A model generated the notes under the pieces. The model was given only the letters and a program-made list of their open reading frames with translations, did no database searches and had not been told where the DNA came from. Both the position numbers and the translations under genes were made by a program. From Aplysia californica (Eukaryota), in contig NW_004797730.1 in NCBI RefSeq assembly GCF_000002075.1, forward strand, positions 187,902 through 251,901: a stretch of DNA of 64,000 bases, in the 5' to 3' direction. Below, piece by piece: positions 2,793 to 50,014 of this stretch; positions within the stretch are counted from its first letter, which is position 1, and each line of letters starts with the position of its first letter.

Positions 2793-4157
2793 ATGATGAA
2801 ATCTTTAACAAGTTTTACACACGAGGTGCCTCATCCAGAAAATGTTGTGTGGGCGCCTCCCGCATACGATGAGCAGCACCATTTGTTTTTTTCGCACGGG
2901 ACCGTCTTGATTGGTATCGTCGGGTCGTTGATCATTACTGTGGCAGTGGTAGGGAATGTTCTTGTCTGCTTGGCAATTTTCACAGAGCCTATTCTCTCCC
3001 ACAGCAAAAGCAACTTTTTTATCGTGTCCCTGGCAGTTGCTGACCTACTGCTCGCTCTCCTGGTCATGACGTTTGCTTTAGTCAACGACCTGTACGGTTA
3101 CTGGTTGTTTGGAGAAACCTTCTGCTTCATCTGGATGTCTGCAGACGTCATGTGCGAAACTGCGTCCATCTTCAGTATCTGTGTCATTAGTTACGATCGC
3201 CTGATGCAAGTGCAGAAGCCACTACATTATGAGGAGTTCATGACTACTACTCGGGCTCTTTTGATTATTGCTTGTTTGTGGATTTGTTCATTTGTCGTGT
3301 CTTTTGTACCAATATTTCTGGAGTGGCATGAGCTCTCTGTGGAAGAAATCAAGGCCATTTTCAAGGATAACAAAGCAGAAAAGGGAAAAGCCCTCGAAGC
3401 ACACACTTTTTCGTCTGCGCATAACCAAACGTTGGGAGTTAACAAAAAGTCGAACAGAAAACCGGAGTGCCTTTTTGATGTACATTTCACCTATTCGGTC
3501 ATCTATTCCTTTATTTGTTTCTACATCCCGTGCACCTTAATGCTGACAAATTACTTACGCCTGTTCTTAATTGCCAAAACGCACCAGGCCCGGATCCGGA
3601 GCCTCCAAATGACCATCCCTCCACAGCTTAGAGGTCAAGGGGCGAGCTCCTACCGGAACCAGGGAACACAAGGCAGTAAAGCAGCCCGGACTCTCACGAT
3701 CATCACAGGAACTTTCCTGGCGTGCTGGTTGCCTTTCTTTATCATCAACCCAATTGCCGCAGCAGATGAACACCTCATCCCACTGGAATGTTTCATGGTG
3801 ACCATTTGGCTCGGTTATTTCAATTCCTGCGTCAATCCTATCATCTATGGGACGTCCAACTCCAAATTCCGAGCAGCTTTCAAACGACTTTTGCGCTGTC
3901 GTTCAGTAAAGTCAGTTGTAGGCAGCATCTCTCCTGTTTCCCCGGCGTATCGGGCATTTTCGTGGATACGTCCCAGCCGCTTAGACCTGTCCTCAAGTGA
4001 ACACCCTAGTGACGCCTGTGATACAGGACGCGGTAAAAATAGTAAGGGAGGTGATTACGCCACTACTGACCCTACAAAGCCCGATGTCAGCGTCAGCGAA
4101 GAGATAATTTATGCTGGGACTAAGGTGTTCGAAAGCGATACAGCCTTCTCCTCATAA
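2793..4157 (+). CDS. Class A aminergic GPCR, 5-HTB1-like / invertebrate D1 (Dop1)-derived, copy 1 (454 aa, intronless CDS)
   Basis: Intact ORF with 7 hydrophobic segments and GN (TM1), SLAVADLL (TM2), D3.32 in WMSADVMC, DRL, W4.50, FYIP (TM5), CWLPFF (TM6) and WLGYFNS-NPIIY (TM7). Very close to the recalled Aplysia 5-HTB1 sequence. Confidence 0.96.
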   Translation: MMKSLTSFTHEVPHPENVVWAPPAYDEQHHLFFSHGTVLIGIVGSLIITVAVVGNVLVCLAIFTEPILSHSKSNFFIVSLAVADLLLALLVMTFALVNDLYGYWLFGETFCFIWMSADVMCETASIFSICVISYDRLMQVQKPLHYEEFMTTTRALLIIACLWICSFVVSFVPIFLEWHELSVEEIKAIFKDNKAEKGKALEAHTFSSAHNQTLGVNKKSNRKPECLFDVHFTYSVIYSFICFYIPCTLMLTNYLRLFLIAKTHQARIRSLQMTIPPQLRGQGASSYRNQGTQGSKAARTLTIITGTFLACWLPFFIINPIAAADEHLIPLECFMVTIWLGYFNSCVNPIIYGTSNSKFRAAFKRLLRCRSVKSVVGSISPVSPAYRAFSWIRPSRLDLSSSEHPSDACDTGRGKNSKGGDYATTDPTKPDVSVSEEIIYAGTKVFESDTAFSS

Positions 4158-8142: not shown

Positions 8143-8580
8143 TGTGAGGCAGCGTGGTAGAATCAGGCACTCGTCAATTTTTGGGCGTGTAGAGTTATTG
8201 GTGTCATCTTAAAGCTAGTTCACTCTTCTTTATTTGAATGAAAAAATATCTATTTATCTTGAATACAAGTCAAGATATTTGCGAATGAAGAAGGTGGAGG
8301 TCACCTGTTTTCAGAGGTAAAATTAGTGAGAAAATTGCCGCCAAAGATTAGTTATTTCCTTAGCTTAAAGAGTCCGTGGTAACTGAAAATTTACATTTTT
8401 TGTTCCATCAACCAACGTTTTTAAAGACAAAACCACACAGAAGTGAGTTCTTGAATGGATATGGAAGGTGTTGAGCCAAAAAACAAAAATTTGATAAAAA
8501 TTCTCAAACTTGGGGAACAATGCAAGTTTCTTCACTTTGATTTTTTTGACAAGAGTCTGATTCCACCACGCTGCCTCACA
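8143..8580. mobile_element. MITE family A (438 bp)
   Basis: ~35-bp TIRs TGTGAGGCAGCGTGGT(G/A)GAATCAGGC(T/A)CTCGTCAA ... TTGAC(G/A)AGAG(C/T)CTGATTCCACCACGCTGCCTCACA; flanked TT/TT; non-coding. Confidence 0.93.
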
Positions 8581-8778
8581 TTTGTTTCCCTCCAGTGTCC
8601 GTGATCTTATGACATGTATAGCTGTATAAACTTCGAACATAAAAAATTTACAAGTACAAGATTGAAACTTACACAGAAACCGCAGTCTTGATCTGAGAAT
8701 TTCACAAGTTTTATTTTCTCTTTCCGTTTCCACCTAGGTGCAACAGACGGTGACAGATCCTTGCTTGTTGTCTTCACG

Positions 8779-9260
8779 ATGAAATCTTTAAAAAGTTCCA
8801 CACACGACGTGCCTCATCCAGAAAATGTTGTGTGGGCGCCTCCCGCATACGATGAACAGCACCACTTGTTTTTTTCGCACGGAACCGTCTTGATTGGTAT
8901 CGTCGGGTCGTTGATCATTACTGTGGCAGTGGTAGGAAATGTTCTTGTGTGCTTGGCAATTTTCACAGAGCCTATTCTCTCCCACAGCAAAAGCAACTTT
9001 TTTATCGTGTCCCTGGCAGTTGCCGACTTACTGCTCGCNNNNNNNNNNNNNNNNNNNNNNNNNNNNNNNNNNNNNNNNNNNNNNNNNNNNNNNNNNNNNN
9101 NNNNNNNNNNNNNNNNNNNNNNNNNNNNNNNNNNNNNNAAAATAGTAAGGGAGGTGATTGCGCCACAGCTGACCCTACAAAGCCCGATGTCAGCGTCAGC
9201 GAAGAGATAATTTACGCTGGGACTAAGGTGTTTGACAGCGATACAGCCTTCTCCTCATAA
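8779..9260 (+). CDS. 5HTB1: Aminergic GPCR copy 2, probably the Aplysia 5-HTB1 locus; middle ~1 kb missing in the gap 9039-9138
   Basis: N-terminus MKSLKSSTHDVPHPE... through TM2 before the gap, and C-terminus NSKGGDCATADPTKPDVSVSEEIIYAGTKVFDSDTAFSS* after it. Both ends match the 5-HTB1 termini as I recall them (not database-verified). Confidence 0.8.
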
Positions 9261-9298
9261 AGCCATTCCTTCTGAAGTAAGCCTGTTCTGAAAATTAT

Positions 9299-9749
9299 TG
9301 TTTGTTTGAATAAGTGTTTTACGGCACCCGCAATTGCATAAGCTCATAGGAGTGCTTGGGCCATATTAAACATTGTCAGTTTGCTAGAAATTTTGAATTT
9401 TTGCCCGAGTGGTGACCGAAGCCTCCTCGTGTTAGATGTTACCTACCACAAGATCAGGGGTGTGGCTGAAAGACAGCAGTAAGAAGGAGCCTAGAAGTAC
9501 CGTTAGCAATAGAAAGACTGCAGAAAGAGTCAGGAGCCTAGAGGAGTAGATAAATAGGAATGGGGGTGGGTGGGGGGGGGAAGTGTAGACGAAAGAATAC
9601 GGCAGAATATGGTTAGAGAGCCGGAAAGGATGGGGAAGGAGAACATTTAGGAGAAGAAAATTTTCCGTCCCTGAGTGATAGGTAATTTTGAACAAGGGAC
9701 GTATTGAATGAGAGTCGAACACAGTAACCCCTTGACCAGAAGAGACCCG
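9299..9749 (-). mobile_element. tRNA-derived SINE, internally deleted, in the 3' flank of copy 2
   Basis: Homologous to 15663-16184; same insertion site as the SINE behind copy 1. Confidence 0.8.
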
Positions 9750-10100
9750 ACTATGAATTAGTAGACTAAAGAAAACGATAAAATAAGAGCGACATAAGGC
9801 ACATGTTCACCCAGGTCAGCAGTCACTAAACAGCGCACGATGTTGGTAAATTATGTACAAACAACAATAGGTAGACCGGGAAAATCAACAGTTGGATGAT
9901 GCATTACGTTTGGAGCTTCTTTGATACCCCCCCCAAAACCCCCCCCCCCAGAAAANNNNNNNNNNNNNNNNNNNNNNNNNNNNNNNNNNNNNNNNNNNNN
10001 NNNNNNNNNNNNNNNNNNNNNNNNNNNNNNNNNNNNNNNNNNNNNNNNNNNNNNNNNNNNNNNNNNNNNNNNNNNNNNNNNNNNNNNNNNNNNNNNNNNN

Positions 10101-10863
10101 TGCTGACAAATTACTTACGCCTGTTCTTAATTGCCAAAACGCACCAAGTCCGGATCCGGAGCCTCCAAATGATCAACCCTCCACAGCTTAGAGGTCAAGG
10201 CGCGAGCTTCTACCGGAACCAGGGAACACAAGGCAGTAAAGCAGCCCGGACTCTCACGATCATCACAGGAACTTTCCTGGCGTGCTGGTTGCCTTTCTTT
10301 ATCATCAACCCAATTGCCGCAGTAGATGAACACCTNNNNNNNNNNNNNNNNNNNNNNNNNNNNNNNNNNNNNNNNNNNNNNNNNNNNNNNNNNNNNNNNN
10401 NNNNNNNNNNNNNNNNNNNNNNNNNNNNNNNNNNNCTTTCTTTATCATCAACCCAATTGCCGCAGTAGATGAACACCTCATCCCACTGGAATGTTTCATG
10501 GTGACCATTTGGCTCCGCTATTTTAACTCTTGCGCCAATGCTATCATCTATTGGGTATTCAACTCCAAATTTCGAGCTGCTTTCAAAAGACTTTTGCACT
10601 TGTATTCAGTAAAGGGAATTGTCAGCAGACTGTCGTTTTGCGCCTCGATTTATCGGGCATTTTCGTGGATACGGCCCAGCCACTTAGTCCTTTCTCTAAG
10701 CGTACACCCTAGTTATGTCTGTGATACAGGACATGATACAAATAGTAAGGAAGATGATTACGTCACAGTTGAACTTACAAAGCCCGATGTCAGCTTCGGC
10801 TTAGAAGAGGTAATTATGATATATTATGCTTGCACAAAGTTTTTCGAAAGCGATACAGTATAG
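10101..10863 (+). pseudogene. GPCR copy 2b: 3'-half fragments (end of TM5 to C-tail) with degenerate TM7; probable pseudogene or mis-assembled copy
   Basis: 10101-10335 encodes LTNYLRLFLIAKTHQVRI...CWLPFFIINPIAAVDEH. 10436-10863 encodes TM7 as WLRYFNSCANAIIYWVF, so WLGY became WLRY and NPxxY became NAxxY. No 5' half is visible and there are gaps at 9956-10100 and 10336-10435. Confidence 0.7.
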
Positions 10864-14480: not shown

Positions 14481-14506
14481 TTCAAGCCTAACAAACATAA
14501 CAAATA

Positions 14507-14944
14507 TGTGAGGTAGCGTGGTGGAATCAGGCTCTCGTCAAAATAATCAAAGTGACGAAATTTGCATTTTTCCGCAAGTTTGTGAATTTTTATCAAATTT
14601 TAGTTTTTTGGCCCAACACCTTTTATGCCCATTAAAGAACTAATTTCTGTGTGGATTTTTCTGAAAAATGTTGATTAAAGGCACAAAAAAAGTAAATTTT
14701 CAGTTACCACAGACTCTTAAGCTAAGGAAAAAAACTCATCTTTGGCGGCCATTTTCTAACTAATTTTACCTCTGAAAACAGGTGACTCCCACCTCCTTCT
14801 TTTGCAAATATCTCGACTTGTATTCAAGATTAATGGATATTTTTTTCATCCGAATAAAGACAAGTGAACAAGCTTTAGGATGATTTCAATAACCCTACAT
14901 GCCCAAAAATTGACGAGAGCCTGATTCCACCACGCTGCCTCACA
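14507..14944. mobile_element. MITE family A
   Basis: Same TIRs, 438 bp, flanked TA/TA, opposite orientation to the 8143 copy. Confidence 0.93.
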
Positions 14945-14980
14945 TATGGCGTTAACAACACTCTGAGGAAAGGGATCAAA

Positions 14981-17688: not shown

Positions 17689-19062
17689 ATGGAATCTTTG
17701 ACCACATTAACACACGAGGTGCCTCATCCAGAAAATGTTGTGTGGGCTCCTCCTGCATACGATGAACAGCACCACTTGTTTTTTTCGCACGGGCCCGTCT
17801 TGATTGGTATCGTCGGGTCGTTGATCATTACTGTGGCAATGGTAGGAAATGTTCTTGTGTGCTTGGCAATTTTCACAGAGCCTATTCTCTCCCACAGCAG
17901 AAGCAACTTTTTTATCGTGTCCCTGGCAGTTGCCGACTTACTGCTCGCTCTCCTGGTCATGACGTTTGCCTTAGTCAACGACCTGTACGGTTACTGGTTG
18001 TTTGGAGAAACCGTCTGCTTCATCTGGATGTCTGCAGACGTGATGTGCGAAACTGCGTCCATCTTCAGTATCTGTGCCATTAGCTACGATCGCTTGAAGC
18101 AAGTACAGAAGCCACTTCATTATGAGGAGTTCATGACTACTACTCGGGCTCTTTTGATAATTGCTTGTTTGTGGATTTGTTCATTTGTCGGGTCTTTTGT
18201 ACCAATATTTCTGGAATGGCATGAGCGATCAGTGGAAGAAATCAAAGCCAATTTCAAAGGTAGCGGTTCGGACAAAGACCGAGTCAAGAAAAAAGCTGCT
18301 GAAGCACAGACGTTTTCGCCCACTTCAAATCAAAGTTCGGGAGCCGTGCAAAAACTGAACACAAAACCCGAGTGTCTTTTCGATGTACACTTCACCTGCT
18401 CGGTTATCTATTCCTTTATTTGTTTTTATATCCCGTGCACAATAATGCTCACGAACTACTTCCGCCTGTTTTTAATTGCCCGTAAACATCGGCACCGGAT
18501 AAACAGCATCAAACCCCAAGTGAATGGCGGTGTACAACAGCCCAGAAGTCAAAGGACTAGCTTCAACCGGAAATGTGGAGTGCGTGGCAGTAAAGCAGCC
18601 CGGACTCTCACGATCATCACAGGAACTTTCCTGGCGTGCTGGCTGCCCTTCTTCATCATCAACCCAATTGCTGCAATAGATGAGCACCTCATCCCATTGG
18701 AATATTTCATGGTGACCATATGGCTTGGCTATTTCAATTCTTGCGTCAATCCCATCATTTATGGGACTTCCAACTCTAAATTCCGAGCTGCTTTCAAACG
18801 CCTTCTCGGTTGTCGTTCTGTTAGGGGAAATGTTCGCGGCTTCTCCCCCCGCAGATCTATTTATAGGGCGTTCTCGTGGATACAGCCCAGCCGCTTAGAC
18901 TTCACGCCAAGTCGACGCTGTAGTAGGACGGTTAGCTGTAGTTTCCACTCAGATACACGAGAGGTGGACAAGAACAGCGATGGAGGCAATAGTGTCAAAG
19001 CTGAACCCTCAAAGTCCGAGGTCATCATAACTGAACAGGAATCCTCATATAACTCCTCCTAA
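17689..19062 (+). CDS. Aminergic GPCR copy 3 (457 aa, intronless CDS)
   Basis: Intact ORF with the same 7TM motifs as copy 1; distinct ECL2, ICL3 and C-tail. Confidence 0.95.
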   Translation: MESLTTLTHEVPHPENVVWAPPAYDEQHHLFFSHGPVLIGIVGSLIITVAMVGNVLVCLAIFTEPILSHSRSNFFIVSLAVADLLLALLVMTFALVNDLYGYWLFGETVCFIWMSADVMCETASIFSICAISYDRLKQVQKPLHYEEFMTTTRALLIIACLWICSFVGSFVPIFLEWHERSVEEIKANFKGSGSDKDRVKKKAAEAQTFSPTSNQSSGAVQKLNTKPECLFDVHFTCSVIYSFICFYIPCTIMLTNYFRLFLIARKHRHRINSIKPQVNGGVQQPRSQRTSFNRKCGVRGSKAARTLTIITGTFLACWLPFFIINPIAAIDEHLIPLEYFMVTIWLGYFNSCVNPIIYGTSNSKFRAAFKRLLGCRSVRGNVRGFSPRRSIYRAFSWIQPSRLDFTPSRRCSRTVSCSFHSDTREVDKNSDGGNSVKAEPSKSEVIITEQESSYNSS

Positions 19063-19246
19063 AATGAGTCTATGAAACAGTAGAATATGGAAAATGGATA
19101 GAAAAGTGACAACACTGGATTTAGTTTCGTCCAACAGCAGTGATTGAACAATAGATGTTGCTCGATACTGTGCAAAAAACACCAACCTTATGAATAGAAT
19201 CACAATATAAGGTTTGTGACACATAATAACAACATTTTTAAAGATA

Positions 19247-20761
19247 TACTCGCCGGCAAAAGTAATGCGAAGTCGCATGACACAAGAAGAGGAGAGTAAA
19301 TTGAAGCAATATTTGTATTAAGAGAAACAGGTTTGAGGTGTCTCAGTTTGCACAAAACATTGCTTGAGAGTTGGGGGTTTGCTTAGGGGCAGATTTTGTT
19401 ATTCGGCATCAATGACCTTGACCTTGGGGCTTTAGTTCCAGTCAGTATCCAGTATGGCCCCCATTAGCGTTGATGACACCAGTGCCTCGGGGGGTACATA
19501 GAGTGGACCAAGCGATTGATTTGGCAGTCGGGGACCTGCACCCGCTCCTGAAAAATAGCAGCACCCAGTAGTACAGCTGTCCGGGGTCTGGGCTGGAGTT
19601 GATTGAGACGCCTCTGAAGGATCCCAAAGGTGTTCTATTGGGTTCACATCTGGTGATCGGGGTTGGTTAGGCATGGTGGGCATGTTGTTTTGTACCAGGA
19701 ACTGCTGGGTAGCACGTGCTGTATGAGGCCGGGCATATCCTGCTGAAAGAGATGGTTTTGATGTCGCTGGAAAAATGGAGCAACATGGGGCTGCAGGACT
19801 TGATTGATGTAGCCCTGCGCCGTCATTCCGTTGTCACATCCAGGTCCTAAATGTTGGAATATTATGGAACCCAGTCTTTGACTGATACCGATTGCGCCCC
19901 ATATCATCACGCTTTGACCTCACCCACGGGTCTCTCTCCCAGATGTTCTCGTCAGAGTAGCGTTGTCCGGAGAGGGCCAAATTCGGACCCGTCTATTGTC
20001 AGAATCGATGCAGAAGCGACTCTCGTCACTGAAGATCACACAATGCCACTGTCGATGAGGCCAGTTAACGGGGTTCTGAGCCCACTGGAGACAAGCTCGT
20101 CGATGATGGACGTTCAGGGATGCTCTCTGCTCCGGACCACGACAATGCAGCCCCTGGCCACAAGTCGGCGGCGTATGGTGCGGTCACTCACGACTCTATC
20201 GTGCGTTCCTATGGTGTTCTGGGCTGTCTCGGAGGCAGACAACCGTGGATCTCGGCGATGCTGACGCACGACGAAGCGGTCTTAGGCAGCTGTTGTCAGC
20301 TGAGGTCTTCTGCTTCTTTGGAGATCTCTCGTGGAGTTGGTTGCCTGGAATCTGTTTTACGGGCGGTAGATAGTGCTGCTGCTGGCATGCACTCGTAGGA
20401 CTGTAGTCACTTGCTGAGGGCTCGTGCCGGCTTGCAGACATCCAATAGCTCTTTCTCGATTTTCCCGTACCAAAAACTCTCTGGTCGTACTTTGTAACAC
20501 TCAATCCCAGACCAATTTAACATGTGAGCAAGAATTCACGACTCAATTCACGTTTTAATTGCATACCACTGAGAGGGTTACTTTGTTGTATTGTTTGATG
20601 CATAATGAGCGGCCAATGAGCATGTTGTGTTTTTTAAATGGAGCCAATCCAATAACAAGAACACATTGCGAATAGAGACAAATGAAAACAACTCACGAAA
20701 ATACTCAGTTTTGTTTTCTACACATGGTGTTACTTTTTCGCGTTATTTATGCGGGTCAGTA
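19247..20761 (-). mobile_element. Tc1-family DNA transposon, near full length, transposase decayed
   Basis: Imperfect TIRs TACTCGCCGGCAAAAGTAATGCGAA / TACTGACCCGCATAAATAACGCGAA with TA flanks. Minus-strand peptides WHCVIFSDESRFC, MIWGAI, LFQQD and SPDVNPIEHLWD cover the DDE triad but lie in different frames. Confidence 0.9.
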
Positions 20762-21304
20762 TATAATAATATTATTAAATGTCCCCTACACGAATGTTTG
20801 ATTTAAAAAAGCAACAAAAAACAAACAAACAACCAAACAACAAAGCAAACAAGAAAAAAAAAATAGGGTAAAAAGAAGAATACAACAAAAGACAATGCTC
20901 ACAGTGAGCAGACCTTGAAATAAAACCTTAATACATTTCTGTTTGCAGGGTAACAACACCGTTTTAAGATAAACAAGTCGAATAGTGACTCCTCTCTTCC
21001 CCCCCCCCCCAAAAAAAAAAAAATCTGTTAAAAATAGCAGGAAACCAAATGAATAAAAATGGAAATAAAAGTCTGTACCCGACTTAATTTTTTCATAACG
21101 ATTTCTCAGTTACAACTGTTGCACGTATACGTTGCTCCTCTGCGTTCGTTACAACATTCTAATACATCGGCATCGTCCCTGATCTTTTCTCTCCTTTTTG
21201 TTCAGAACGATCTTTCCCTCTTGTATACTAGTTTGTACTTTTATATTCAGACATGTGCATCACTATTAATTATTACTATGACGATCCGTTTGTGAAGAAG
21301 GAAA

Positions 21305-21482
21305 GTGGGTGGTTGGCGGGTGCTCTGGTGTGGTTTGCTCCTTCTTTCCTATCAAACATCTATCGTCTTTATCTCCCCTCCTTCTTTTTTGTGTTTGTTA
21401 CTCTCTTGTAACGCCTCTAATCTTCGGCACTTATATGACCTTATTGTGTTGCAAGTGCCGTAAAACTCTTACGAAAACTAAA
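21305..21482 (+). mobile_element. Short 5'-truncated LINE 3' UTR fragment with the stem-loop tail shared with the SINE
   Basis: Further copies at 23266-23445 (-), 57621-57780 (-) and 31833-31995 (+). Ends in TATGACC...GCCGTAAAAC plus (ACTAAA)n-like sequence. Confidence 0.7.
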
Positions 21483-21507
21483 AAAGAAGAAGGAAACTTG
21501 AAAACAG

Positions 21508-21618
21508 ACATCATCATCCGGTGCCTTGCCGACTGGCGTAGGCGATCATGGACCTCCACTTCACCCTGTCCTGCGCTACAGCAATGGTGTCTGTTGTTCT
21601 TGCTGCTCCCAACCATGT
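21508..21618 (-). mobile_element. RTE LINE extreme 3' end with (GAT)n tail
   Basis: Near-identical copy at 37019-37129; the minus strand ends ...GGCAAGGCACCGGATGATGATG. Confidence 0.65.
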
Positions 21619-22092
21619 CGTCGTCTTGTCCTGTATTTTTTCCCTCTGTCTGCCTCTGCCTCTGCCTCTGCCTCTGCCTCTCTTTCCAATCTTTGTTTAT
21701 TGAAGTGTTATGATCCATAATGTTCTAGGGAAAGAATACAGCAGTGGTTTTCCCTTGCCTTCTGCTAGATTTGTGTACGGTTTACTCCACTAGCCTTTGT
21801 CCAAAAGGACTAACCCACAAGGCAGTGGCGGCAGGTGGCAGGTTTCGGCGCCTACCTCTCGCCTGACAGTCTCTTTACTGAGCACATGAGGTATTTTATA
21901 GAGACAGGATTGCCACCACCCTGTTCCACCTCGCACTCCAAGACAACAGACACACAGACATAATATCATAAGGTATCAAAAGAAGTAAAGCCCAATTTGC
22001 AACTACCTTCCCCCCCTCCTTTTATTCCCCTTGAATGTCTTGCAAGTTTCGTTGAGTGAGACTGAGATGCACTTTGGGGAAGACAATAAAAT

Positions 22093-22530
22093 TGTGAGGC
22101 AGCGTGGTGGAATCAGGCTCTCGTCAAAATAATCAAAGTGAAGAAACTTGCATTTTTTCGCAGGTTTGTGAATTTTTATCAAAGTTTTGATTTTTGGCTC
22201 AACACCTTTCATGCCCATTAAAGAACTCATTTCTGTGTCGATTTTTTTGCAAAACGTTGATTTAAGGCACAACATAATGTAAATTTTCAGTTACCACGAA
22301 CTCTTAAGCTAAGGAAATAGCTAATCTTTGGTGGCCATTTTCTCACTAATTTTACTTCTGAAAACAGGTGACCCCCACCTCCTTCATTCGAAAATATCTC
22401 AGCGTGTATTCAAGATAAATGGATATTGTTTTCATCCAAATAAAGATAAGTGAACAAGCTTTAAGATGATACCAATAACTCCACATGCCCAAAAATTGAC
22501 GAGAGCCTGATTCCACCACGCTGCCTCACA
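22093..22530. mobile_element. MITE family A
   Basis: Perfect TIRs, 438 bp. Confidence 0.93.
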
Positions 22531-23873
22531 ACTATTGAAAAAGCGAAAACATGTTCAAGAGTAAAAGTACAATAATGTAGTGCAGAGCCCTGATGAAAGC
22601 TCCAGTGTCACTGTAGTATGTTAACACCTTCACCGAACAGATTACTTCCGGAAACGAAGGTTTCTTTCTTTTGACCAGCATCAATAAAACGTATTTCCAA
22701 ATACAAATTTCAATACAGTTCTAGGTCATTTTAATTATAGAGGAACCACATTTTCTATGGTAAGCCCTGCTCCGGGCTCTTATTCGCCCTCTCTACAAGA
22801 AGCCTTTATAGCAGAAGGGTCCTGCCACTTTCTCAGAACGTTCAGTTTATCGCGGAAAAAAAGCTCTCCAGGGTGGGTATTGTCGTCAGCAATTTTTTGC
22901 CCCCAGTGCAAAGAGCAAAGAGAAGTATCGAGTACGCATTAAAATAAAACGAATTTCAAATACACAGATTGTTCAGTTGCTCAGGATAAAATGGAAAACG
23001 GGAGCAACAAGTATTGCCAGAACGTGGCTGTTAGACTTCATACACTTCAAAAGCCAATGTCTACTCAGCTCAAATCGATGACAATATCATGTTACCGATT
23101 TACGTATTTGCAGAAATAAAAAGTGTTGTAATGATGATGTATAGGCCAAAAGCTTTTGAAATCAGGAAAATCATTTTGAAATACGCTCTCTTTGGGTTTT
23201 TTAAAATATTTTCACTTTTTCCTAGATTGAATCCTGGCTCCAAAAAAATAGAAATTAGAGAAGTGTTTAGTTTTAGTAGAGGTTTTACGGCGCTCGCAAC
23301 TGCATAAGGTCATATGAGCGCCAGAAGATTAGAGGTGTTACAAGAGAGTAACAAACATAAAAAAGAAGGAGGGGAGATAAGGACGATATATTTTTTTATA
23401 GGAAAGAAGAAGCAAACCACACCAGAGCACCCGCCAACCACCCACTAGAGAAGTGGCCAAACGGAAAAGTAATAGGCCTGGAGAAGAAATATGCCATTCT
23501 TTTATGCCAAGGAGATTATACTAGTTGTTATAGCGTATGTGAAGCAACACAGCAGATGGGTAATGCTTGGATAACTGACTACATGTATACATGTATTATT
23601 TAGCCCTAACGAAAAAGCTTCAGTATGTCACAGTATGTGAGCCAGAGGCCAAACCTGTACAGGTAGCACTAGCTCCTATTTGGTTGGGTTTTTAAAAAAA
23701 GGAAAACGTTCTGGTACTTGTGCTGTAGATAATATGTACGTCAATGAGCGCATGTAAGACAAACTATTAGTTCAGAGCCGAATAAATAGGCCTATTTTGC
23801 TATCCAGACTAGACATCTTGGCTGCTTCTAAAAGATCAAGATCAAATAGTTCACCATGGTATGCTTCTGCCTT

Positions 23874-25105
23874 GGGGGCTCCTCTGGTCTAGAGGTCCGG
23901 TGTTCACCTCTCTTTCAACAGGACCGGGGTTCGAAACCTGACAACGACGGAAAAGTTTCTTCTTTAAAAAGAGATCATTTCACCTTTCCTGCTCTACCGT
24001 CTGTTTTTTTCTCTCCACTTTCTGTCCCCCCCCCCCCCCCGTTTGGCCCCCTCCTCTGGGCTCCTGACTCTTTCTGCTGCCTTTCTACTGCTACTCCTTG
24101 GCTCCCTCCTACTGCTATTTTTCAGTCACACCCCTTATGAGGAGGTGGAGGTGGTAAGTTCTTAAAAGTACCTGTATCTTGAAATAACAATTGATAACAA
24201 GCTTGACTGGCATCTCCACGCTGCCCTTGTGCATAAAAGGTAAATCAAAGAATGATTCTTTTTTTTATGGAAATTAAGAAGTCTTCGTGTCGATAATAAG
24301 ATTAAGACCCTTTTATACCATCCAACGATTGAAAGCGTGCTATTATTTTGTATTTGCTGCTGGGCAGGGAATTGTGGGGTGAAAGATAAAGAAAACTTCG
24401 ATAGAACCATTACGAAAGATCCCTGGATATGATTTTACTAGAATTGATGAAATGTAGAACACCACATGTATAAAAAAAGATAAAAGTATTATAAACGACC
24501 TATCACACCCTTTTTCCACGCAAATTGTAAGAGCACGCAGCGGCAGATATGTTCCTCTGAAACAAAGAACGTTTTTTACCATCTAGCATAGGGCTATTGT
24601 CAGAATAAGCATCAATGTGAAGAATATTGCTCTTTCGAGTATGAATCTCTATAACTCCTAAGGTCTTGTATTTAAATTCCTGCATGTGGTTGAATGATGC
24701 ATCTGGTGTGATATGTGCATTTTGTCAGCTTTACTTCTCTTTTCATATTGAATTTTAATGAGAGTAATATATAATTTAATTATTTAAAAGAATACCTGCT
24801 TGTGTTTTTACGGTCCTCTACAGCCAAAAATAATTTCCGTCTGGGACAATAAAGTATTACACGTATCTTATCTTATCTTGGGATAGGTAAATTCTAACAT
24901 CTTGCCTCTCAGGCTCTTGTTGGAGATCCTGAGAGCCAGTTGTGCAAGTTAAAGTTTCCTTGGTGGTCCTAAATTCGATAGGAGTAGGCTTCGGCTGCCA
25001 CCGGGGCAAAATTCAAAATTAATTCCGACCAAACTGCACTAAATGCTTTGAGTGTTCCCCGCGCTCATGTGACCTCATTATGCAGTTTGGAGCGTCGTAA
25101 AACAC
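23874..25105 (+). mobile_element. tRNA-derived SINE split by a nested Rex1-like LINE 3' fragment (~24160-24880)
   Basis: SINE head and body at 23874-24137 resume at ~24885-25105. The insert translates to KYL...IDNKLDWHLH...LFLWKLRSLRVD...IESVLLFCICCWAGN and ends in AATAAA + (ATCTT)n. Confidence 0.78.
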
Positions 25106-27389
25106 TTAGATTTGTTTTAGTAGATGTTTTACGGCGCTCGCAACTGCATGAGGTTTATACAGTTGCGAGCGCCGTAAAACAAGGTCATATGAGCGCCAAG
25201 GGGTGGATGTCAACAGAGGAGTCGTTACAGAGAATCAGACTTACTCTGCTCACCTCTCCAGCTTCAACAGCACAAAGTCCGCTTCGACTATCACTATATC
25301 AAGGCACCCTGGAAACAGCGGGCTACAATAGTGTGACAAACATACAAAAGAAGTAGAGGAAAATGACAATAGTAAGTATTAGGAAAGAAAAAGCAGCAGC
25401 TCCCTGGTGCAGGTCAGGCACAGTTATGAGCGTGACATTGTTGGATCAGCCCATTTACAATTCCAATTCTACTGATAACGCCCCCTCCCCTTTTGGGAAT
25501 GGCCCTAACGACACTATAGTCANNNNNNNNNNNNNNNNNNNNNNNNNNNNNNNNNNNNNNNNNNNNNNNNNNNNNNNNNNNNNNNNNNNNNNNNNNNNNN
25601 NNNNNNNNNNNNNNNNNNNNNNGGGGTTACTTAGTTGTGCAATAAAGCTGAACAAACGCATTACACTGTAACGAAACAGTATATTATTAAAGTGGGTGAT
25701 TTCCCATAAAAAGTTCATTTCTTCAATAACACAGCCTACCCTAGCTCTACTAGCAGATCTTAAAATGAAGTATGCAACACCGGAAATTACGACAGGCAAT
25801 ACAAACGTTCGAATAAACAACAGCATTGGCTTTTCCATTGCACTGTCTGCCTTACATAATTAATTTTCCTGTGTTACATTTTAACCTGCAATGCAAATGG
25901 AAAATGGCTGAAAGTGATGACGAAGTGCACGGTGCACAAATACATTATGGCTGAAAAAGGAAAAGGGTTTGACTTTCGCTCAGAAGTACAGAAATCTGTG
26001 GGTCTTATATGAATTTTGGTCATGAGAAGCTCTTCGACAACTTAAAAGGCATTCTATGGATGTGGTCTGATCGCATTGTCACCATGTTTACCCTGCATCA
26101 ATAGAGTATTCCTTTTTGTACCCTCTGTTGATGTTTATGTTGTACTGTCTTGGTGCGTGGCTGTGTATGAGGCTGATCCTGAAAACCCATGACGTTTATC
26201 AGAGAAGAAGAGTTTTCAGCAAAGAGTAGACTACATCTCTTCCACATCGAGTGTCTGTGCACTTTGCTGCTTTGTATGTAGTAAAGTTTAGTTCGTGGAT
26301 CACGGTAAGTTCAGTGAAGCCACATTTAACCTAAACAAGATAAGACAGCAGACATTGAAAAGCGATTGAACTGAATAACCTCAGCAGAGTTCATCGTCTA
26401 CTCAAACACTCTCATGCACGACTTTAACCGCAACAATTGCCTAGGAATCAGAAAGATGGACTCAAGTCCAGTTAAAAATGACATATATTATATACTGAAA
26501 CCTTATCCCCCCCCCCCTTTCACACTTTTTTATGAGCAAGATTTTACAACTAGAGATAGGCAAAATGGCGATCGGTGAATGATCGTGACAAAATTGAGTG
26601 GGTCATCTTGCCTGTATCTTGCTTCCAATTACTGTTTACAGTAGTGCGCTTTAAGAAATTGAGTTTACAAATTGCTGTCCTTAATCTGGAATATGAATGC
26701 ATTAGGTAAGCGAACCAATAAATGATAGCTATCTATTAAATGCGGATGTTAAAATCGGGCATCGAATCGGATTTCAGCGTTCTGCCGATGGGGATTCATG
26801 GAATCACCCCGACCCATAGGCCTTCATTTTCAACACATCAGCGCTCCCCTTGTATCTAGATCTAATTGATTACAATGTAGAATCTACACGTGTTATCAAG
26901 TCAGCTTTATGGCCATTTTTTGGTGACACATTATCTTTATTTTGAAAAATTAGATGTCTATTATTACTGTAAAGAATAGTCCTAAAAATAACGGGTTTTT
27001 TGAGTCAGCTGTCCCTGAAAATGGCGTTTTTCATGTTGCAGCTCGATGTCCACAAAACTATAATATTATTCTAGTTAAAATATTCCCAGGTCCTTTGAAT
27101 ATCACCCCGTCGCAAAAAATCTGGTATCGAAATGCAGAGAAAGAAAATGCCTATTAATCTCACGTTTAAATATATGTAAACATTTAGTATTGAGTACGGT
27201 ACCAATTACAACTTCATGAGCTTCTAGAATTTGCCTGCACATGGCTGAAATTATAAAAGTACACAGATACAGTGGCCTTTTCTAAGATTTAAAAAAAAAC
27301 CCAACTACTTGCATTTTCTCTTTACAGATCGGGGAAGAAAGCTGGGAAAAGGACAGTGACTAGTGTTACTCTATATTCAAGTGTCCACG

Positions 27390-28733
27390 ATGGAAACTTC
27401 TGAAAAGAGTGCACATGGATTGCCCCACACAGAAAATGTTGTGTGGGCGCCTCCCGCATACGATGAACAGCACCACTTGTTTTTTTCTCACGGAACCGTC
27501 TTGATTGGTATCGTCGGGTCGTTGATCATTACTGTGGCAGTGGTAGGAAATATTCTTGTGTGCTTGGCAATTTTCACAGAGCCTATTCTCTCCCACAGCA
27601 AAAGCAACTTTTTTATCGTGTCCCTGGCAGTTGCCGACTTACTGCTCGCTCTCCTGGTCATGACGTTTGCTTTAGTCAACGACCTGTACGGTTACTGGTT
27701 GTTTGGAGAAACCGTCTGCTTCATCTGGATGTCTGCAGACGTCATGTGCGAAACAGCGTCCATCTTCAGTATCTGTGTCATTAGTTACGATCGCCTGAAG
27801 CAAGTGCAGAAGCCCCTACTTTACGAGGAATTTATGACTGCCACTCGGGCTCTTTCGATTATTGCTTCATTGTGGATTTGTTCATTTGTCGTGTCTTTTG
27901 TACCAATATTTCTGGAATGGCATGAGCTCTCGGTGGAAGAAATCAAAGCCATTTTCAAGGGTCGCAATCCATACAAAGACACGGTCAAGGAAAATGTCAC
28001 CAATGTACATAAGCCTAATTTTTCTTCTGTACTCAAACAAACTTTGAGAACTGAACAAAAAGTGACCACAAAACCCGAGTGTCTTTTTGACGTGCATTTC
28101 ACCTACTCCGTCGTCTATTCCTTCATTTGTTTCTACATACCGTGCACCTTAATGCTGACAAATTACTTACGCCTCTTTTTAATTGCCCGAAAACATCGGC
28201 ACCGGATCAAGAGCCTCGAGAAGACCAGCCTTCCACAGCCCGGCGATGAAGGGCCACGCTCCCACCGTAAACGCTCATCACAAGGCAGTAAAGCAGCCCG
28301 GACTCTCACGATCATCACAGGAACTTTCATGGCGTGCTGGTTGCCTTTCTTTATCATCAACCCAATTGCCGCAGTAGATGAACACCTCATCCCACTGGAA
28401 TGTTTCATGGTGACCATTTGGCTCGGTTATTTTAATTCTTGCATCAATCCCATTATCTATGGGACGTCCAACTCCAAATTCCGAGCAGCTTTCAAACGAC
28501 TTCTGCGCTGTCGTTCTGTAAGGGAAAACGTTGGAAACGTCACCCGCAATAGTTCGGTGTACAGGGCGTTCTCATGGATACGACCCAGCCTCATAGAGGA
28601 AGGCTTAACACAAGGCCAATGCTGTAGCAGTAGTCGTCGCGCCTTTGACAAAGGACAAGATCAAACCAGCGTTGGGGTTGATTACGTCATAGATGATTTC
28701 CCAGCACCCCAGGCCATCATCGCAGAACTTTGA
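27390..28733 (+). CDS. Aminergic GPCR copy 4 (447 aa, intronless CDS)
   Basis: Intact ORF. The ATG at 27390 is homologous to the starts of the other copies (the ORF-track start at 27363 is a GTG). All 7TM motifs present. Confidence 0.95.
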   Translation: METSEKSAHGLPHTENVVWAPPAYDEQHHLFFSHGTVLIGIVGSLIITVAVVGNILVCLAIFTEPILSHSKSNFFIVSLAVADLLLALLVMTFALVNDLYGYWLFGETVCFIWMSADVMCETASIFSICVISYDRLKQVQKPLLYEEFMTATRALSIIASLWICSFVVSFVPIFLEWHELSVEEIKAIFKGRNPYKDTVKENVTNVHKPNFSSVLKQTLRTEQKVTTKPECLFDVHFTYSVVYSFICFYIPCTLMLTNYLRLFLIARKHRHRIKSLEKTSLPQPGDEGPRSHRKRSSQGSKAARTLTIITGTFMACWLPFFIINPIAAVDEHLIPLECFMVTIWLGYFNSCINPIIYGTSNSKFRAAFKRLLRCRSVRENVGNVTRNSSVYRAFSWIRPSLIEEGLTQGQCCSSSRRAFDKGQDQTSVGVDYVIDDFPAPQAIIAEL

Positions 28734-30141
28734 AGCCGCATCAGCACCATGACGTTGGAAAGCAATGACGTTCTCTTCGGTTATTTCCCATTTCAGAAAA
28801 TTGTATCGTCGAAAGCGTAGATATGAAAAAAAACCCATTGTAGAGCAGAGAAAAGAATGACGGCATTGGAATACATTATGTAGTTCCTTCTCATACAACA
28901 AATCCCTTAATTTAAGCGAACATGGGTTCGTAAATGTTGACGAAATACATGTATCAGCCAGATGTGAAGAATCGTAACGGTCAGGTGCAATAGATCAGGC
29001 GTTTTTTTGATGACATGCGTTTTTTTAGACATGTCGATTAATGACATGATGTATTGGCCAAAGTTGTTTGAAAAACAGAATTCTCATAAGTTCTTTTCAA
29101 ACATTCCTCGCGTTTTGTTTCATATGGAAACTGAAAGGGGACAGCTCCCTCGATATCACGAGGTACTATAGGCCTACGTACGTGCTGAAGGCCCTAAAGA
29201 TCGAATCCACAACTTGATGTTCTTGAGTTCGGGTTGTTTGGGGAAGTTTGTCTTTTTAGGGTAGCTTTGATCTCATAACATATCAAACTCTAGCTTGTAG
29301 AACTTTTTGAGTTTGAAATAATCGCAAGCTTAATGCTATGTAGATTTAGCTCCATTTTGCCAGCTTTCTTTCTTGTGAACGTATGGCATAGATACAATGT
29401 ATCTAATATACGTGAAAACTGAACCTGAAATTGTGCAGAACACGAGCATTAATCGGAATCGTAATAACTTTGGGCTCAAACTCAAAACTCAAAGGAAAGA
29501 TTTTTCAACAGCCTTGAAAGCTGTAACAAAAATGTGAAGAGCCGGAAATTTGAGATAGTTCAAGGATATATAAATAATATATGTGTGTGTCTATTATAAT
29601 ACATATACACATGTATATAAATCATGTAAACCTCTTTTTATCAGAAGACAAAAATAAAGTCTTCCCGGTCACTTCTCTTTTATCACAGTTGCATGTGTAG
29701 TGTGTGCTCCCCAGTGGCTGTTACAGCATTCCAAGACATCTATGATGTCTATGAAATACGTCTCTTATATTTTATAACTCGTTGTTCAGGACGGTACTTT
29801 AATGCTTTTTTTGTTCATTTGCTAGTTTGTTTTATTTATATTTGAATTTAAGAGAGGGCATCAACTTGATGACGATCCTTTCAAGGAGGGCAACTTTCAA
29901 TTGACAAACGAAATAAAAAGCTTTTATCAGCACCAGCTGAGACATATGATTTTATTCATACATATCAAAACCGACATAGCTTTTCTAAAAGCAAAGTGAA
30001 CATCTTGTGGAGTGCAACCTTTGCACCAAACCAAAGATTTCAATGTTCATAGCTTTTATACTGAGAGAATCAACGTGCACAACACTAGGAAGATTTCTCT
30101 TCGTCGAGTTGATGCTTTGTTGGACCCTAACCTAGCCTCAA

Positions 30142-32317: not shown

Positions 32318-35300
32318 CTGTAAAAAGAAAGAAAACAAATTTTTAAAAAGTATATTTGATTTTTGTTTGTTAACCCTCTTTCATTTGGGTTTAAGGTTCT
32401 GCTTTTTAGTGGATCGCAACTTGAGTGGTGTTTTTGGGGGTACAGTAGAATCATCTTATTATGAGAGGGAGGGGACTAGTGCGAAGAATTCATGATAGCA
32501 GGATTCACGTTATAAGAGATTCAGTAATAAATTCAAGGAAAATAATAAAATAGGCCTAATCTATGAGTTTGGTGGTCTGTTTATTTCTTTTTGTTATCTC
32601 GCCTGATGATGCCAGATATGTTGTCCCCACCCCACCACACAACACCCTGTGGTGCGTTCCGTCTGCTTGCGCACATGGGGTACACACCACACTCTGCCCA
32701 CATCACACATTCGCTTCATCCATCACAGCACTGTGACCTCTCCATCCCCGCATCGGAGAAGTGAGAGGCATGGTAAGCCTAGATAATCTAGACTAGGCTA
32801 GCCTATCACACAATCTGTTCTGCTTGCCTGCACATGCCACACCCTCCCCACTCAACTCATTCGCTCCTTCCTTCATTGTTGGCACACGAGGGCTATCCCA
32901 TTCTGTTTCGCTAGATCACCAAAAAGTTTTTCCTCAGGCAAGGTTTTACATGTATTGACCAACCAGAAGCGCAGTGCACAGCAGCAATATTCCTCTATAA
33001 CTGACTCGAATGTTTGTCTGACTGCGCTGTAGCAATATTTTATTTACAAAAGATAAAGAAGAAAAAAACCTCAGGGGTTTTAAAATAGTGTCTCTATCAC
33101 ATATTTCTCGTTCTTTCTGGATTTGTTAAAACCGGACTCTTGAACCAATTATGTCAACCCCAAGATCTACACCTGGTCTTATGCAACGTTTACTTTCTAT
33201 TTTCCCCCATCTCCTAGTTCTCTGTTTGACACAAAACAAATTGCCAATATTAGACTGAATTATAGCCGTTTTAAGGTAACACCCGTAACCACCTAAAACT
33301 GGTAGGGTGCGAAAAATTGTGGAACAATTTGCACACTAAAAGAGTTAAGGACAAAAACGGTGCTCATCAGTCTAAAGTCATGATGCTGGGTCTCCTCTAT
33401 GCCAATGTAAGCTTATAGGTACTTGCTTCTGTCCTAGCCTCAACCACAATACTTTTCTGAATAGTTTAGTGATAACTTCGTCATCTTTTCTCATAGGTTT
33501 TTCCTACCCATGTTCCCAGCACATACCTAGTATTCTACGATAGGCAGAAATAAACTGAGAGCCTGCTTACATGCAGAACATCTTGAAAAAAAAACTTGCA
33601 GTTGGAATTCAAAGAAGAGAAGGCCTACCCAGGTTGGCTGTAAGGGAAATTTTGTAAAACTAATCCTGACCCAAAAGTGAACAATCAACAACAGGTGACT
33701 TTCTGAAATGGCATATATGGGTGCAATAACTCTTTATCTCTGGCAAGGCTCACGGTCGGAACTGCTGTGCCAGTAAGCTGCTGGCAGTGGTTGGTCACGT
33801 TCTTTTACGACGACTTTTGACGCTGAAAACAGGTCTCTTTACTGGGAGTTCCTTCAAAAGATGAAGAACTATCACAATAGGTTCTGATCAGATGACCTAT
33901 TTAGTGACATATTTGAGACTCCAAAGATTTTGTACAAAAGAGGGCCCAGGCATAATGGGTTTACCTACCCCCCTTGGAGATAAAGAGTTAACATATTCAC
34001 TGCAAAGATTTTATTACCCTTTACGATATGGATTAATTAGCTTGGGCTGGATTTGATGTTAATGCGCATTTTTCAGTTGCATCTACTTTGTAGATGAAGA
34101 AATTGTATTTACACCACTGTGAAAAACTGCAAAAGTCAAATCATTACCTTATCAGAGCCAGCATTGTTTGTGTTGGTAATGTTCAACTTGTCAGCAATTT
34201 TGTCAATGACACGGCCAACTGTCCAGCACTGTGAGAGAAGGAGAGAAAAAAAAGGCTTATATCCATGAAGTGAATCTATCTCATAAATTACAAATTCATT
34301 TTACAGAGATAGTCTTAGTATGAAAACAAAGATGATTAACCTCATTACACTAGTATTCATTTAGACCAATATGTGTGGCGGCGTGGTGGAATCAGGCTCT
34401 CGTCAAAATAATCAAAATAAAGATACTTGCATTTTTCCGCAGGTTTGTGAATTTTTATCAAATTTTTGTTTTTTGGCTCATCACCTTTCATGCCCATTAA
34501 AGAACTCATTTCTGTGTGGATTTTTTCTGAAAAACGTTAATTAAAGGCATAAAAAATGTAAATCTTCAGTTACCACGGACTCTTAAGCTAAGGAAATAAC
34601 TAATCTTTGGCGGTCATTTTCTCACTAATTTTACCTCTGAAAACAGGTGACCCTCATCTCTTTCTTTTGCAAATATCTCTACTTGTATTCAAGAAAAATG
34701 GATATTTTTTGCATACAAATAAAGACAAGTGAACAAGCTTTAAGATGATACTAATAACTCTACATGCCCAAAAATTGACGAGAGCCTGATTCCACCACGC
34801 TGCCTCACATATGATGCCAAAGACGAATGAAGAACACGATGATATTTTAGCGCCGACTTGGTTGTTTGTGTGGTTACTTGGAACATAAAACAAAGGTTTA
34901 TAACACTACTAACCTTCTGTCTGCCTGCGCCTACAACAGGAGTTAGCCAAACCTGTTTCTCTCTGTGCTGTGATCCTTTCCTCAGCTTTGGGGCCCCGAT
35001 GCGTTGGAATCTCACACGTTACACAAATAAACCGAGGCTCTAACTAGCCTTTTCTCCACCCGAAATCTCAGCAGGCCTCGTCTGCCTTGCTACAGCTCTT
35101 CCCTCTAAAGTCTCACCTGAAGTAACCCAGACTGCTTTTGTAAACTTGCAAACAATACAACTGAACAGAGACTCACACTTTACTCACTCTCACACTTGCA
35201 GCAAACAATACAATAGGCTTGGCCTAACCCCCTGCCACAACCAAAAACAACAAAATAGATCAGTTTGTTGATAAAATATCAGCTGCCGCTGCATTGGACA

Positions 35301-47875: not shown

Positions 47876-48212
47876 AATAGGTAGAATTAATTTTAAAAAG
47901 TCATTTCTAACAAAGTGATCAGGTTTTTTATTTTGTGAAATTCGGTAGCAGGGCTAAGGGGTCAATAGTGAATACGGTATCTACAGTGTGGGTGGCACTT
48001 GAGCGTTATGCAACATGCTTGGCGTGTGTGGAAATCCGAAATTTCAGAAGGACCGAGTTTCAAACGTCTGTGAGCGATTCCTGAAGCTTTCTGCATGGCA
48101 AAAACGAGAGTAGAAGAATGCACCTCTGGCTACGAACTGTACTCACTTGTCTGCCTACATAAGCCGCCGTTTCAACAATATTTTACGTACAGGTATTACC
48201 GCGCCAAGCAAC

Positions 48213-49727: not shown

Positions 49728-50014
49728 TATATATATCTCTCCTTGCACTGTACCCTGAGGTTAGCCTGAGGGTTCCAGGTTCAGCCTCTGCGAAATCCGT
49801 AAATTTAACCAAAAAATTGATAAAAGTCACCTTGTCTCTCTGACACATGCTTACTCTGATCACAAAAAGGACGGTTATAAGAGTACCTGTCACCTTCAAA
49901 ATAATTGCTTTATTAATTTTAAACAAGAACAATGACCGAATAAATCACTACCCAGCCAGACATCATAATACTTTCTACTGTAACAGTCAGAAGAAAGCGT
50001 GAACCGACATAATA

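What the first reader, a model, noticed from the sequence alone, without database searches (positions are those of the whole stretch)
17689..28733. Gene-conversion mosaic: homogenised TM cores with divergent ECL2, ICL3 and C-tails
Seen: from ENVVW through TM3, copies 1, 3 and 4 are almost identical in DNA including silent sites (about 9 differences in ~280 bp between copies 1 and 4 by my count). Their ECL2, ICL3, C-tails and flanks are barely alignable. Affinity also switches along the gene. Copy 4 shares ETVC and IARKHRHRI with copy 3. Across TM6-TM7 it is nearly base-identical to copy 1 (about 2 differences over ~150 bp), whereas copy 3 has many silent changes there. Purifying selection alone would not conserve silent sites. 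Inference: concerted evolution keeps one shared pocket while G-protein/arrestin-contacting and ligand-entry loops diversify, giving one input and several signalling outputs.
Basis: partly seen in the sequence, partly recalled or inferred. Interest (0 to 1): 0.8.

Follow-up and report, generated by a model that had tools for sequence, protein, structure and literature searches.

The report
Partly homogenised sea-slug receptor gene array
A known cluster of orphan dopamine-receptor-like genes in the sea slug Aplysia keeps copying pieces of its membrane-spanning regions from one gene to another while the loops and tails drift apart; this is real, but it is a familiar kind of evolution and does not show that the copies signal differently.

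Summary
The genes are the Aplysia californica 'B receptors' (5-HTB1/B2 family, D1-derived, ligand unknown): copy 1 = AplB3, copy 3 = AplB5, copy 4 = AplB4. Silent divergence is patchy even among protein-conserved helices: dS about 0.16 in TM1-TM4, 0-0.16 in TM6, 0.6-1.3 in TM5. The clearest switch is the 5-HTB1 piece (copy 2): copy-1-like in its 5' flank, 2/216 from copy 4 in TM1-TM2 (P=6.5e-6). Contigs from two animals show the shared tracts at multi-copy depth, so this is no assembly artefact. The gap at 25523 is intergenic. Recurrent non-allelic gene conversion is well supported (about 0.88). The functional inference is not: pocket and core G-protein-facing residues are nearly invariant, the most homogenised tract is the G-protein-facing half of TM6, TM5 is not converted, and loop dN/dS is 0.5-0.7 (relaxed). 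Likeliest: one ligand, one G protein, with differences in expression and desensitisation. No orthologues from other species were found, so the decisive cross-species test is missing. The same pattern is known from CCR2/CCR5 and TLR1/6. The scan had not noted this mosaic elsewhere.

The parts
2793..4157 (+). Copy 1 = AplB3, intronless-CDS class A GPCR, 454 aa
   Evidence: contig offset 2842-4102 in PMC5176290 S5 Table
8779..9038 (+). Copy 2, 5' piece = N-terminus to mid-TM2 of 5-HTB1; 5' flank copy-1-like, TM1-TM2 copy-4-like (clearest conversion breakpoint, near codon 14)
   Evidence: 1 aa difference in 86 from Q16950; 11/151 v 66/140 in flank, 7/216 v 2/216 in TM1-2; P=6.5e-6
9139..9260 (+). 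3' piece matching the 5-HTB1 C-terminus, separated from the 5' piece by an assembly gap (not filled)
   Evidence: 39/39 aa identical to the Q16950 C-terminus; 92.5% to copy 1 tail and flank
10101..10335 (+). Gap-bounded fragment TM5 end-ICL3-TM6, 97% identical to copy 1
10436..10863 (+). Degenerate 3' half of a further copy (WLRY and NAIIY in TM7); its first 43 nt repeat the end of the preceding fragment
17689..19062 (+). Copy 3 = AplB5, 457 aa; converted in TM1-TM4 and the first half of TM6, largely escaped in TM5 and TM7-H8
17731..18222 (+). Copy 3 homogenised island ENVVW-TM4 (dS 0.16-0.18 to copies 1 and 4; TM1-TM2 1 silent difference in 52 sites to copy 4)
18223..18585 (+). Copy 3 unconverted block ECL2-TM5-ICL3 (TM5 dS 0.9-1.3)
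18586..18642 (+). First 57 nt of TM6, identical in copies 1, 3, B6, the B2 half and the 10101 fragment; one non-silent difference in copy 4
25523..25622 (.). Assembly gap, intergenic; no ORF crosses it; not filled
27390..28733 (+). Copy 4 = AplB4, 447 aa from ATG 27390; cloned full length from nervous-system cDNA in 2016
27432..27923 (+). Copy 4 homogenised island ENVVW-TM4
   Evidence: shared multi-copy contigs
27924..28283 (+). Copy 4 unconverted block ECL2-TM5-ICL3; single-copy depth; 6 of 7 listed allelic differences are non-synonymous
28284..28517 (+). Copy 4 homogenised island TM6-TM7-H8 (TM6 0/20 silent differences to copy 1, B6 and the B2 half)
28518..28733 (+). Copy 4 divergent C-tail (dS about 0.9, dN/dS about 0.6)

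Best explanation
An old tandem array of at least seven D1-derived orphan aminergic GPCR genes undergoes recurrent non-allelic gene conversion confined to islands of high identity. Shown: the copies are old (dS 0.6-1.3 in TM5, loops and tails), two islands (ENVVW-TM4, about 490 bp; TM6-H8, about 235 bp) are far younger, affinities switch at island edges, and the tracts are real DNA. Inferred: purifying selection keeps the helices alike, so they stay able to pair and exchange DNA and silent sites are swept along. N-terminus, ECL2, mid-ICL3 and tail drift under relaxed constraint, gather indels and become barriers. TM5, a 120-bp island between two such barriers, is too short to convert often. Inferred function: the intact copies (B3-B6) bind the same amine in a D3.32/E3.36 pocket that lacks the catechol serines, couple to the same G protein (most likely Gs, as their D1/5-HT4/beta-adrenergic kin do), and differ in where they are expressed, in glycosylation and in phosphorylation-dependent desensitisation. 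Conversion alone about 0.88; the whole account including passive loop drift 0.65.
For: Silent heterogeneity within protein-conserved helices. Internal control: in TM1-2, B1 v B3 silent divergence (7/52) is not below their non-coding divergence (7/109), so these sites are free to change, yet B1 v B4 is 1/51 against 48/98 (P=2e-10). The TM1-2 tree is rejected on the 5' segment (AU P=0.006), and the TM6-H8 tree on the middle and tail segments (P=0.005, 0.026). B3 v B6: 0/67 silent differences over TM2-TM4 against dS 0.27 in loops and tail. Two animals give multi-copy-depth contigs over the islands and single-copy contigs over the loops. Loop dN/dS 0.47-0.74 pooled. 33 of 35 pocket-lining and 28 of 35 G-protein-facing positions are invariant in the four intact copies. 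About 200 bp as the efficient-pairing length comes from yeast (PMC3924818); purifying selection sustaining conversion is described in PMC3924837.
Against: No orthologous array from another species was found, so the hallmark 'paralogues closer than orthologues' is untested. The reverse AU tests do not reject (P=0.07, 0.40), because the islands hold few informative sites. The most uniform tract, the first 57 nt of TM6, lies at an island edge, which island length alone does not predict. An RNA contig from a differently labelled organism differs from copy 4 at only 3/238 nt in TM2-TM3; if that is a distant species, it points to constraint. dN/dS below 1 cannot exclude selection on a few loop sites. 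Ligand and G protein are unmeasured.
Confidence: 0.65

Rival explanations
1. Conversion as above, but the ECL2-TM5-ICL3 block and the tails are kept different by selection (a 'peak of divergence'), giving paired-receptor-like copies with one ligand and different outputs or kinetics.
For: The unconverted block is one contiguous 360-bp peak that includes silent sites, as selection against conversion would give (PMC3924837). Positions 5.66-5.69, 34.52 and 6.28-6.29 vary; ICL3 length is 19-34 aa; tail Ser/Thr counts are 11-22; ECL2 sequons differ. ICL3 dN/dS reaches 0.7-0.9. Precedent: 'merohomogenization' of paired leukocyte receptors (PMC3210942).
Against: No region has dN/dS above 1. Core G-protein contacts are invariant and lie in the most converted tract. 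Loop alleles are 6:1 non-synonymous, close to the neutral 3.4:1, at about the density of the non-coding flank. B2 and B4 behaved alike (no response to 5-HT) in the one published assay (PMC5176290).
Confidence: 0.2
2. No conversion: silent sites in TM1-4 and TM6 are slowed by nucleotide-level constraint (RNA structure, antisense frame, exonic regulatory element) or by locally low mutation rate.
For: 57 nt of TM6 are invariant across six copies (17 degenerate codons, P=0.0045). The other-organism contig is nearly identical in TM2-TM3.
Against: The same silent sites vary freely between B1 and B3. Constraint shrinks all branches and cannot switch affinities. No unusual fold (z -0.2 to +1.7). GC3 is 0.52-0.59 and CpG is present in both kinds of segment. 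Antisense open stretches also cover regions where copy 3 has many silent changes. It remains open only for the TM6 57-mer.
Confidence: 0.08
3. Unequal crossing-over and recent duplication made chimeric genes once, without recurrent conversion.
For: The array shows birth and death: a frameshifted copy (B7), a degenerate 3' half, and young pairs (B1/B3 flanks 92% identical).
Against: Both flanks of the converted islands keep the same affinity (B1 sides with B3 at the 5' and at the 3' end), which needs two exchanges per island. Different pairs share different tracts of 50-135 bp.
Confidence: 0.04
4. Assembly artefact: reads of different paralogues were mixed into consensus tracts.
For: Draft assembly; the copy-2 region is broken into four pieces at the shared tracts. 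No long read spans a gene.
Against: In a run probably from the source sample and in an independent 2022 animal, copy-4-specific contigs run 30 nt into the shared tracts. A 133-bp TM1-TM2 contig with 1 difference has about 4 times single-copy depth, and a TM6 contig about 6.7 times. The only divergent TM1-TM2 contig among the pieces listed is the B7 pseudogene (107 shorter pieces were not shown).
Confidence: 0.03

Closest known systems
Aplysia B receptors (5-HTB1 Q16950, 5-HTB2 Q16951; AplB1-B7 of Farah et al. 2016, PMC5176290)
   Same: These are the genes: contig offsets and primers match B3, B5 and B4; copy-2 pieces match Q16950. Described as seven tandem, D1-derived receptors, five expressed in CNS; B2 and B4 did not respond to 5-HT in a PKC-translocation assay.
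   Different: The paper passages read do not mention gene conversion or mosaic structure, and library searches found no paper that does (subscription journals not covered). The paper's 'AplB1' contig corresponds by position to the half gene that matches Q16951.
CCR2/CCR5 gene conversion (PMC8877049 and references in it)
   Same: Neighbouring class A GPCR paralogues with tracts over TM1-TM4 or TM5-TM7 homogenised and the N-terminus excluded.
   Different: There two genes, shown across many mammal species; here seven or more genes, one species, an aminergic orphan family.
Mosaic concerted evolution of TLR1/TLR6, EMR2/CD97, BMP8A/B (PMC2720389)
   Same: Some segments evolve in concert and others diverge; converted segments have low dN/dS.
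   Different: Those cases meet the cross-species test; this one could not be tested.
Merohomogenization of paired opposing leukocyte receptors (PMC3210942)
   Different: Here the signalling face (TM6, ICL2 core, H8) is homogenised or invariant, and no opposite outputs are known.

Membership tests
Class A aminergic GPCR | 7tm_1 domain with D3.32, DRY-like, CWxP and NPxxY motifs | tested here: met
   PF00001 195-199 bits; D3.32, D3.49-R3.50, W6.48, P7.50-Y7.53 present
Aplysia B (5-HTB) receptors | Same loci and primers as AplB3, B4, B5; near identity to Q16950/Q16951 | tested here: met
Aplysia B (5-HTB) receptors | Derived from the D1-like receptor | tested here: inconclusive
   Best non-family hits are molluscan D1-like proteins at 42-46%; PDB hits do not separate D1 from 5-HT4; no tree was built; stated in PMC5176290
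Catecholamine (D1-type) receptor | Serines at 5.42 and 5.46, small residue at 3.36 | tested here: not met
   Y5.42, C5.46 and E3.36 in all intact copies
Serotonin receptor | Activation by 5-HT | not testable with these tools
   Published evidence is negative or explained by endogenous receptors (PMC5176290)
Mosaic concerted evolution by gene conversion | Silent divergence heterogeneous along the gene beyond chance | tested here: met
Mosaic concerted evolution by gene conversion | Affinities or trees differ between segments | tested here: met
   Fisher P=6.5e-6 and AU P=0.005-0.026 in one direction; reverse AU not significant
Mosaic concerted evolution by gene conversion | Paralogues more alike than orthologues of another species in the tracts | tested here: inconclusive
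   No orthologue found; two short contigs from an unnamed second organism cannot be placed
Mosaic concerted evolution by gene conversion | Tracts exist in real DNA | tested here: met
   Multi-copy-depth contigs in two animals; no long reads
Mosaic concerted evolution by gene conversion | Raised GC in converted tracts | tested here: not met
   GC3 0.52-0.54 in TM1-4 against 0.49-0.56 in TM5; an optional signature
Paired receptors (merohomogenization) | Signalling determinants differ between partners | tested here: not met
   28/35 G-protein-facing positions invariant; variation only at 34.52, 5.66, 5.67, 5.69, 5.75, 6.28, 6.29
Paired receptors (merohomogenization) | Shared ligand and different measured outputs | not testable with these tools
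   Ligand unknown

The most novel reading that the evidence does not exclude
The array is a paired-receptor-like set of aminergic GPCRs for an unidentified non-catechol amine (D3.32 plus E3.36), in which conversion is selected to keep pocket and G-protein face in step while selection blocks conversion over ECL2-TM5-ICL3 and the tail to keep different ligand kinetics and arrestin/GRK handling; the invariant TM6 57-mer marks a recombination hotspot or a DNA/RNA element.
Probability: 0.15. Interest if true: 0.7.

Novelty: new member of a known kind. Interest (0 to 1): 0.4.

Why it matters
The B receptors were the first 'serotonin receptors' cloned from a central model of learning and are still orphans. 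If conversion keeps them alike, one ligand found for one copy probably serves all; knock-down, probes and antibodies aimed at the helices will hit five to seven genes; and trees or dates from whole coding sequences mislead. The array is also a compact test of whether unconverted loops are passive barriers or selected. The evolutionary mechanism itself is well known.

Tried and rejected
Assembly artefact: tested with contigs from two animals and rejected. RNA structure: no signal. Antisense frame, GC3 and CpG: no explanation. Positive selection in loops: dN/dS below 1 throughout. The copy-4 switch between copies 3 and 1 as main evidence: P=0.07, replaced by the copy-2 piece. Orthologues: two word searches, one full-length and one on a 166-aa middle piece, gave only A. 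californica members; these see only 0.55-1.75 times the query length, so absence is not shown. The big representative search was not run: it merges proteins above 50% identity and would not separate paralogues. The D1-like gene as outgroup for silent sites is saturated. Literature searches found no description of conversion in this family. No gap was filled: the 1995 clones were compared only over stretches sequenced in the assembly, the C1008 fragment was treated as a separate sequence, and letters that a fetched locus showed at a stretch masked in the window were not used. No structure was predicted; residue numbering rests on motifs and the alignment.
Full report
What the locus is. The genome has 927 Mb in 4,332 scaffolds, and its proteins cluster with Aplysia californica entries. 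The window holds three intact class A GPCR reading frames with no intron in the coding part (2793-4157, 17689-19062, 27390-28733) and a broken copy-2 region. Contig offsets and primers in Farah et al. 2016 (PMC5176290) identify them as AplB3, AplB5 and AplB4 of the Aplysia 'B receptor' family. Just upstream lie AplB6 (L002) and a half gene matching 5-HTB2 (L005). A frameshifted copy, AplB7, lies on another scaffold. That paper describes seven D1-derived receptors, five expressed in the CNS; B2 and B4 did not translocate PKC in response to 5-HT, and the original 5-HT data were explained by endogenous receptors.

The gap. 25523-25622 is intergenic. No frame is open across it and its flanks share no 12-mer. 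Each of the two genes sits on its own contig, so their spacing is an estimate, but the comparison does not depend on it. No gap was filled.

The observation. Restricting to same-amino-acid codons in helical segments removes the effect of protein constraint, and the silent differences remain patchy: permutation P = 0.006, 0.001 and 5e-5 for the three pairs. dS is 0.16-0.18 in TM1-TM4, 0-0.16 in TM6, 0.19-0.71 in TM7-H8, 0.59-1.31 in TM5 and 0.70-1.09 in loops plus tail. At fourfold sites 14/77 vary in TM1-4+TM6 and 25/44 elsewhere (P = 2e-5). TM5 is the key control: as conserved in protein as the other helices (dN 0.03-0.06), yet as old as the loops at silent sites. ECL2 and ICL3 align at 30-45% difference, so 'barely alignable' holds only for distal tails and outer flanks.

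Switches of affinity. Among copies 1, 3 and 4 alone the switch is weak (P = 0.07), because copy 3 is simply the odd one out from TM5 on. The copy-2 5' piece (5-HTB1) gives a clean case on one contiguous stretch. In the 5' flank and first 14 codons it differs from copy 1 at 11/151 and from copy 4 at 66/140; in codons 15-86 at 7/216 and 2/216 (P = 6.5e-6). The flank alignment to copy 4 is near saturation, so that figure is approximate. Silent sites there are free to change: B1 v B3 differ at 7/52 of them, no less than in non-coding DNA (7/109), while B1 v B4 differ at 1/51 against 48/98. B3 and B6 share 0/67 silent differences over TM2-TM4 though B3's sister by both flanks is B1. AU tests reject island trees on the flanking segments (P = 0.005-0.026) but not the reverse (0.07, 0.40).

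Artefact test. Laid on 27200-28900, contigs from a 2011 DNA run, probably the source sample, and from an independent 2022 animal give single-copy depth (about 20 and 55) over copy 4's N-terminus, ECL2, ICL3 and tail. Those contigs run 30 nt into the shared tracts and end. A 133-bp TM1-TM2 contig with one difference has depth 223, and a TM6 contig 371, that is about four and six to seven copies. Paralogous TM5 contigs carry 22-24 differences in 130-160 bp at single-copy depth. The only divergent TM1-TM2 contig listed carries B7's frameshifts. The tracts are therefore real. Limits: contigs only, no piece spans a gene, and 107 shorter pieces were not shown.

Other rivals. No unusual RNA fold; GC3 and CpG are alike in both kinds of segment; antisense open stretches overlap regions where copy 3 changes freely. 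Constraint stays possible only for the first 57 nt of TM6, invariant at silent sites in six copies (P = 0.0045). Two RNA runs labelled as another organism gave TM2-TM3 contigs 3/238 and 6/233 from copy 4; the three letters of the first are all variants seen among A. californica paralogues. The label is coded, so a sister species, a mislabel and contamination cannot be told apart. No orthologues were found, so the cross-species hallmark (PMC2720389) is untested.

How it most likely works. Shown: old copies, young islands, breakpoints at island edges. Inferred: selection keeps the helices similar enough to pair, conversion homogenises them, and loops under relaxed constraint (pooled dN/dS 0.47-0.74) gather indels and stop tracts. 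Degree of homogenisation roughly follows island length (490, 235, 120 bp) around the 200 bp quoted for efficient pairing in yeast (PMC3924818); TM6 is the exception. Purifying selection sustaining conversion is described in PMC3924837. Alleles of copy 4 in the second animal are non-synonymous at 6 of 7 listed loop sites, near the neutral ratio and at about the density seen in the 5' flank; this is one pair of alleles.

Function. In the four intact copies 33 of 35 pocket-lining positions are invariant, including D3.32, E3.36, Y5.42, S5.43, C5.46 and N6.55, and so are 28 of 35 G-protein-facing positions, including R3.50, L34.51, A5.65, H5.68, I5.72, K6.32, A6.33, T6.36 and L6.37 (numbering by motifs, roles from general knowledge of aminergic receptor structures). 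The most homogenised tract encodes the cytoplasmic half of TM6. One ligand and one G protein, probably Gs given the nearest solved relatives, with differences in expression and desensitisation, is likelier. Selection on a few loop sites, producing one peak of divergence over ECL2-TM5-ICL3, is not excluded (0.2).

Comparison and verdict. I found no description of it in the B receptors within the open library, and the scan had no such note elsewhere in this genome. Two notes on this window concern the pocket residues and the D1 origin. New member of a known kind; interest 0.4.

Noticed in passing
L006, L007, L008 (scaffold C245): The D1-like parent is also multiplied. L006 and L007 have identical coding sequences 6 kb apart with a gap between (possible false duplication). 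L008 is an inverted paralogue about 40 kb away. Its first 60 codons have 0/39 silent differences to L006, while TM1-ECL1 carry 12 amino-acid against 3 silent changes: the opposite pattern to the B array.
   Followed up: partly
window 8779-10863: 'Copy 2' is four gap-separated pieces of at least two genes; the pieces either side of the 10336-10435 gap overlap by 43 identical bases. A public 533-aa protein (P0002) fuses copy 1 with one piece and is probably a gene-model artefact.
   Followed up: partly
L009:1504-2200 (scaffold C1008): AplB7 is a frameshifted pseudogene, present with the same indels in two animals; it still shares a 63-bp identical tract with copy 1 in TM4.
   Followed up: partly
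L005:1507-2391: The assembly's 5-HTB2 half has Arg at 7.42, as the degenerate copy at 10436 does, where the 1995 clone has Gly; a second difference falls on a paralogue-variable site. Possibly segregating conversion tracts.
   Followed up: partly
window 3672-3728, 18586-18642, 28284-28340: First 57 nt of TM6 invariant at silent sites in six copies; hotspot or nucleotide-level element unresolved. Position 6.30 is Gly in all copies, where the D1-like relative has Asp.
   Followed up: partly
window 8136-8586, 14499-14950, 22085-22540, 34365-34816, 49283-49730, 50008-50462, 59354-59804, 60250-60699: Dispersed repeat of about 445 bp, 85-91% identical, in both orientations; probably a MITE- or SINE-like family.
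   Followed up: no
window 48074-48482: Short frame resembling a Tc1/mariner transposase N-terminus (helix-turn-helix-like; impression from the translation).
   Followed up: no
about 45-60 nt upstream of each ATG: Pyrimidine tract plus AG conserved in the copies, suggesting a 5'-UTR intron; copies 3 and 4 share a 12-nt insertion there.
   Followed up: no
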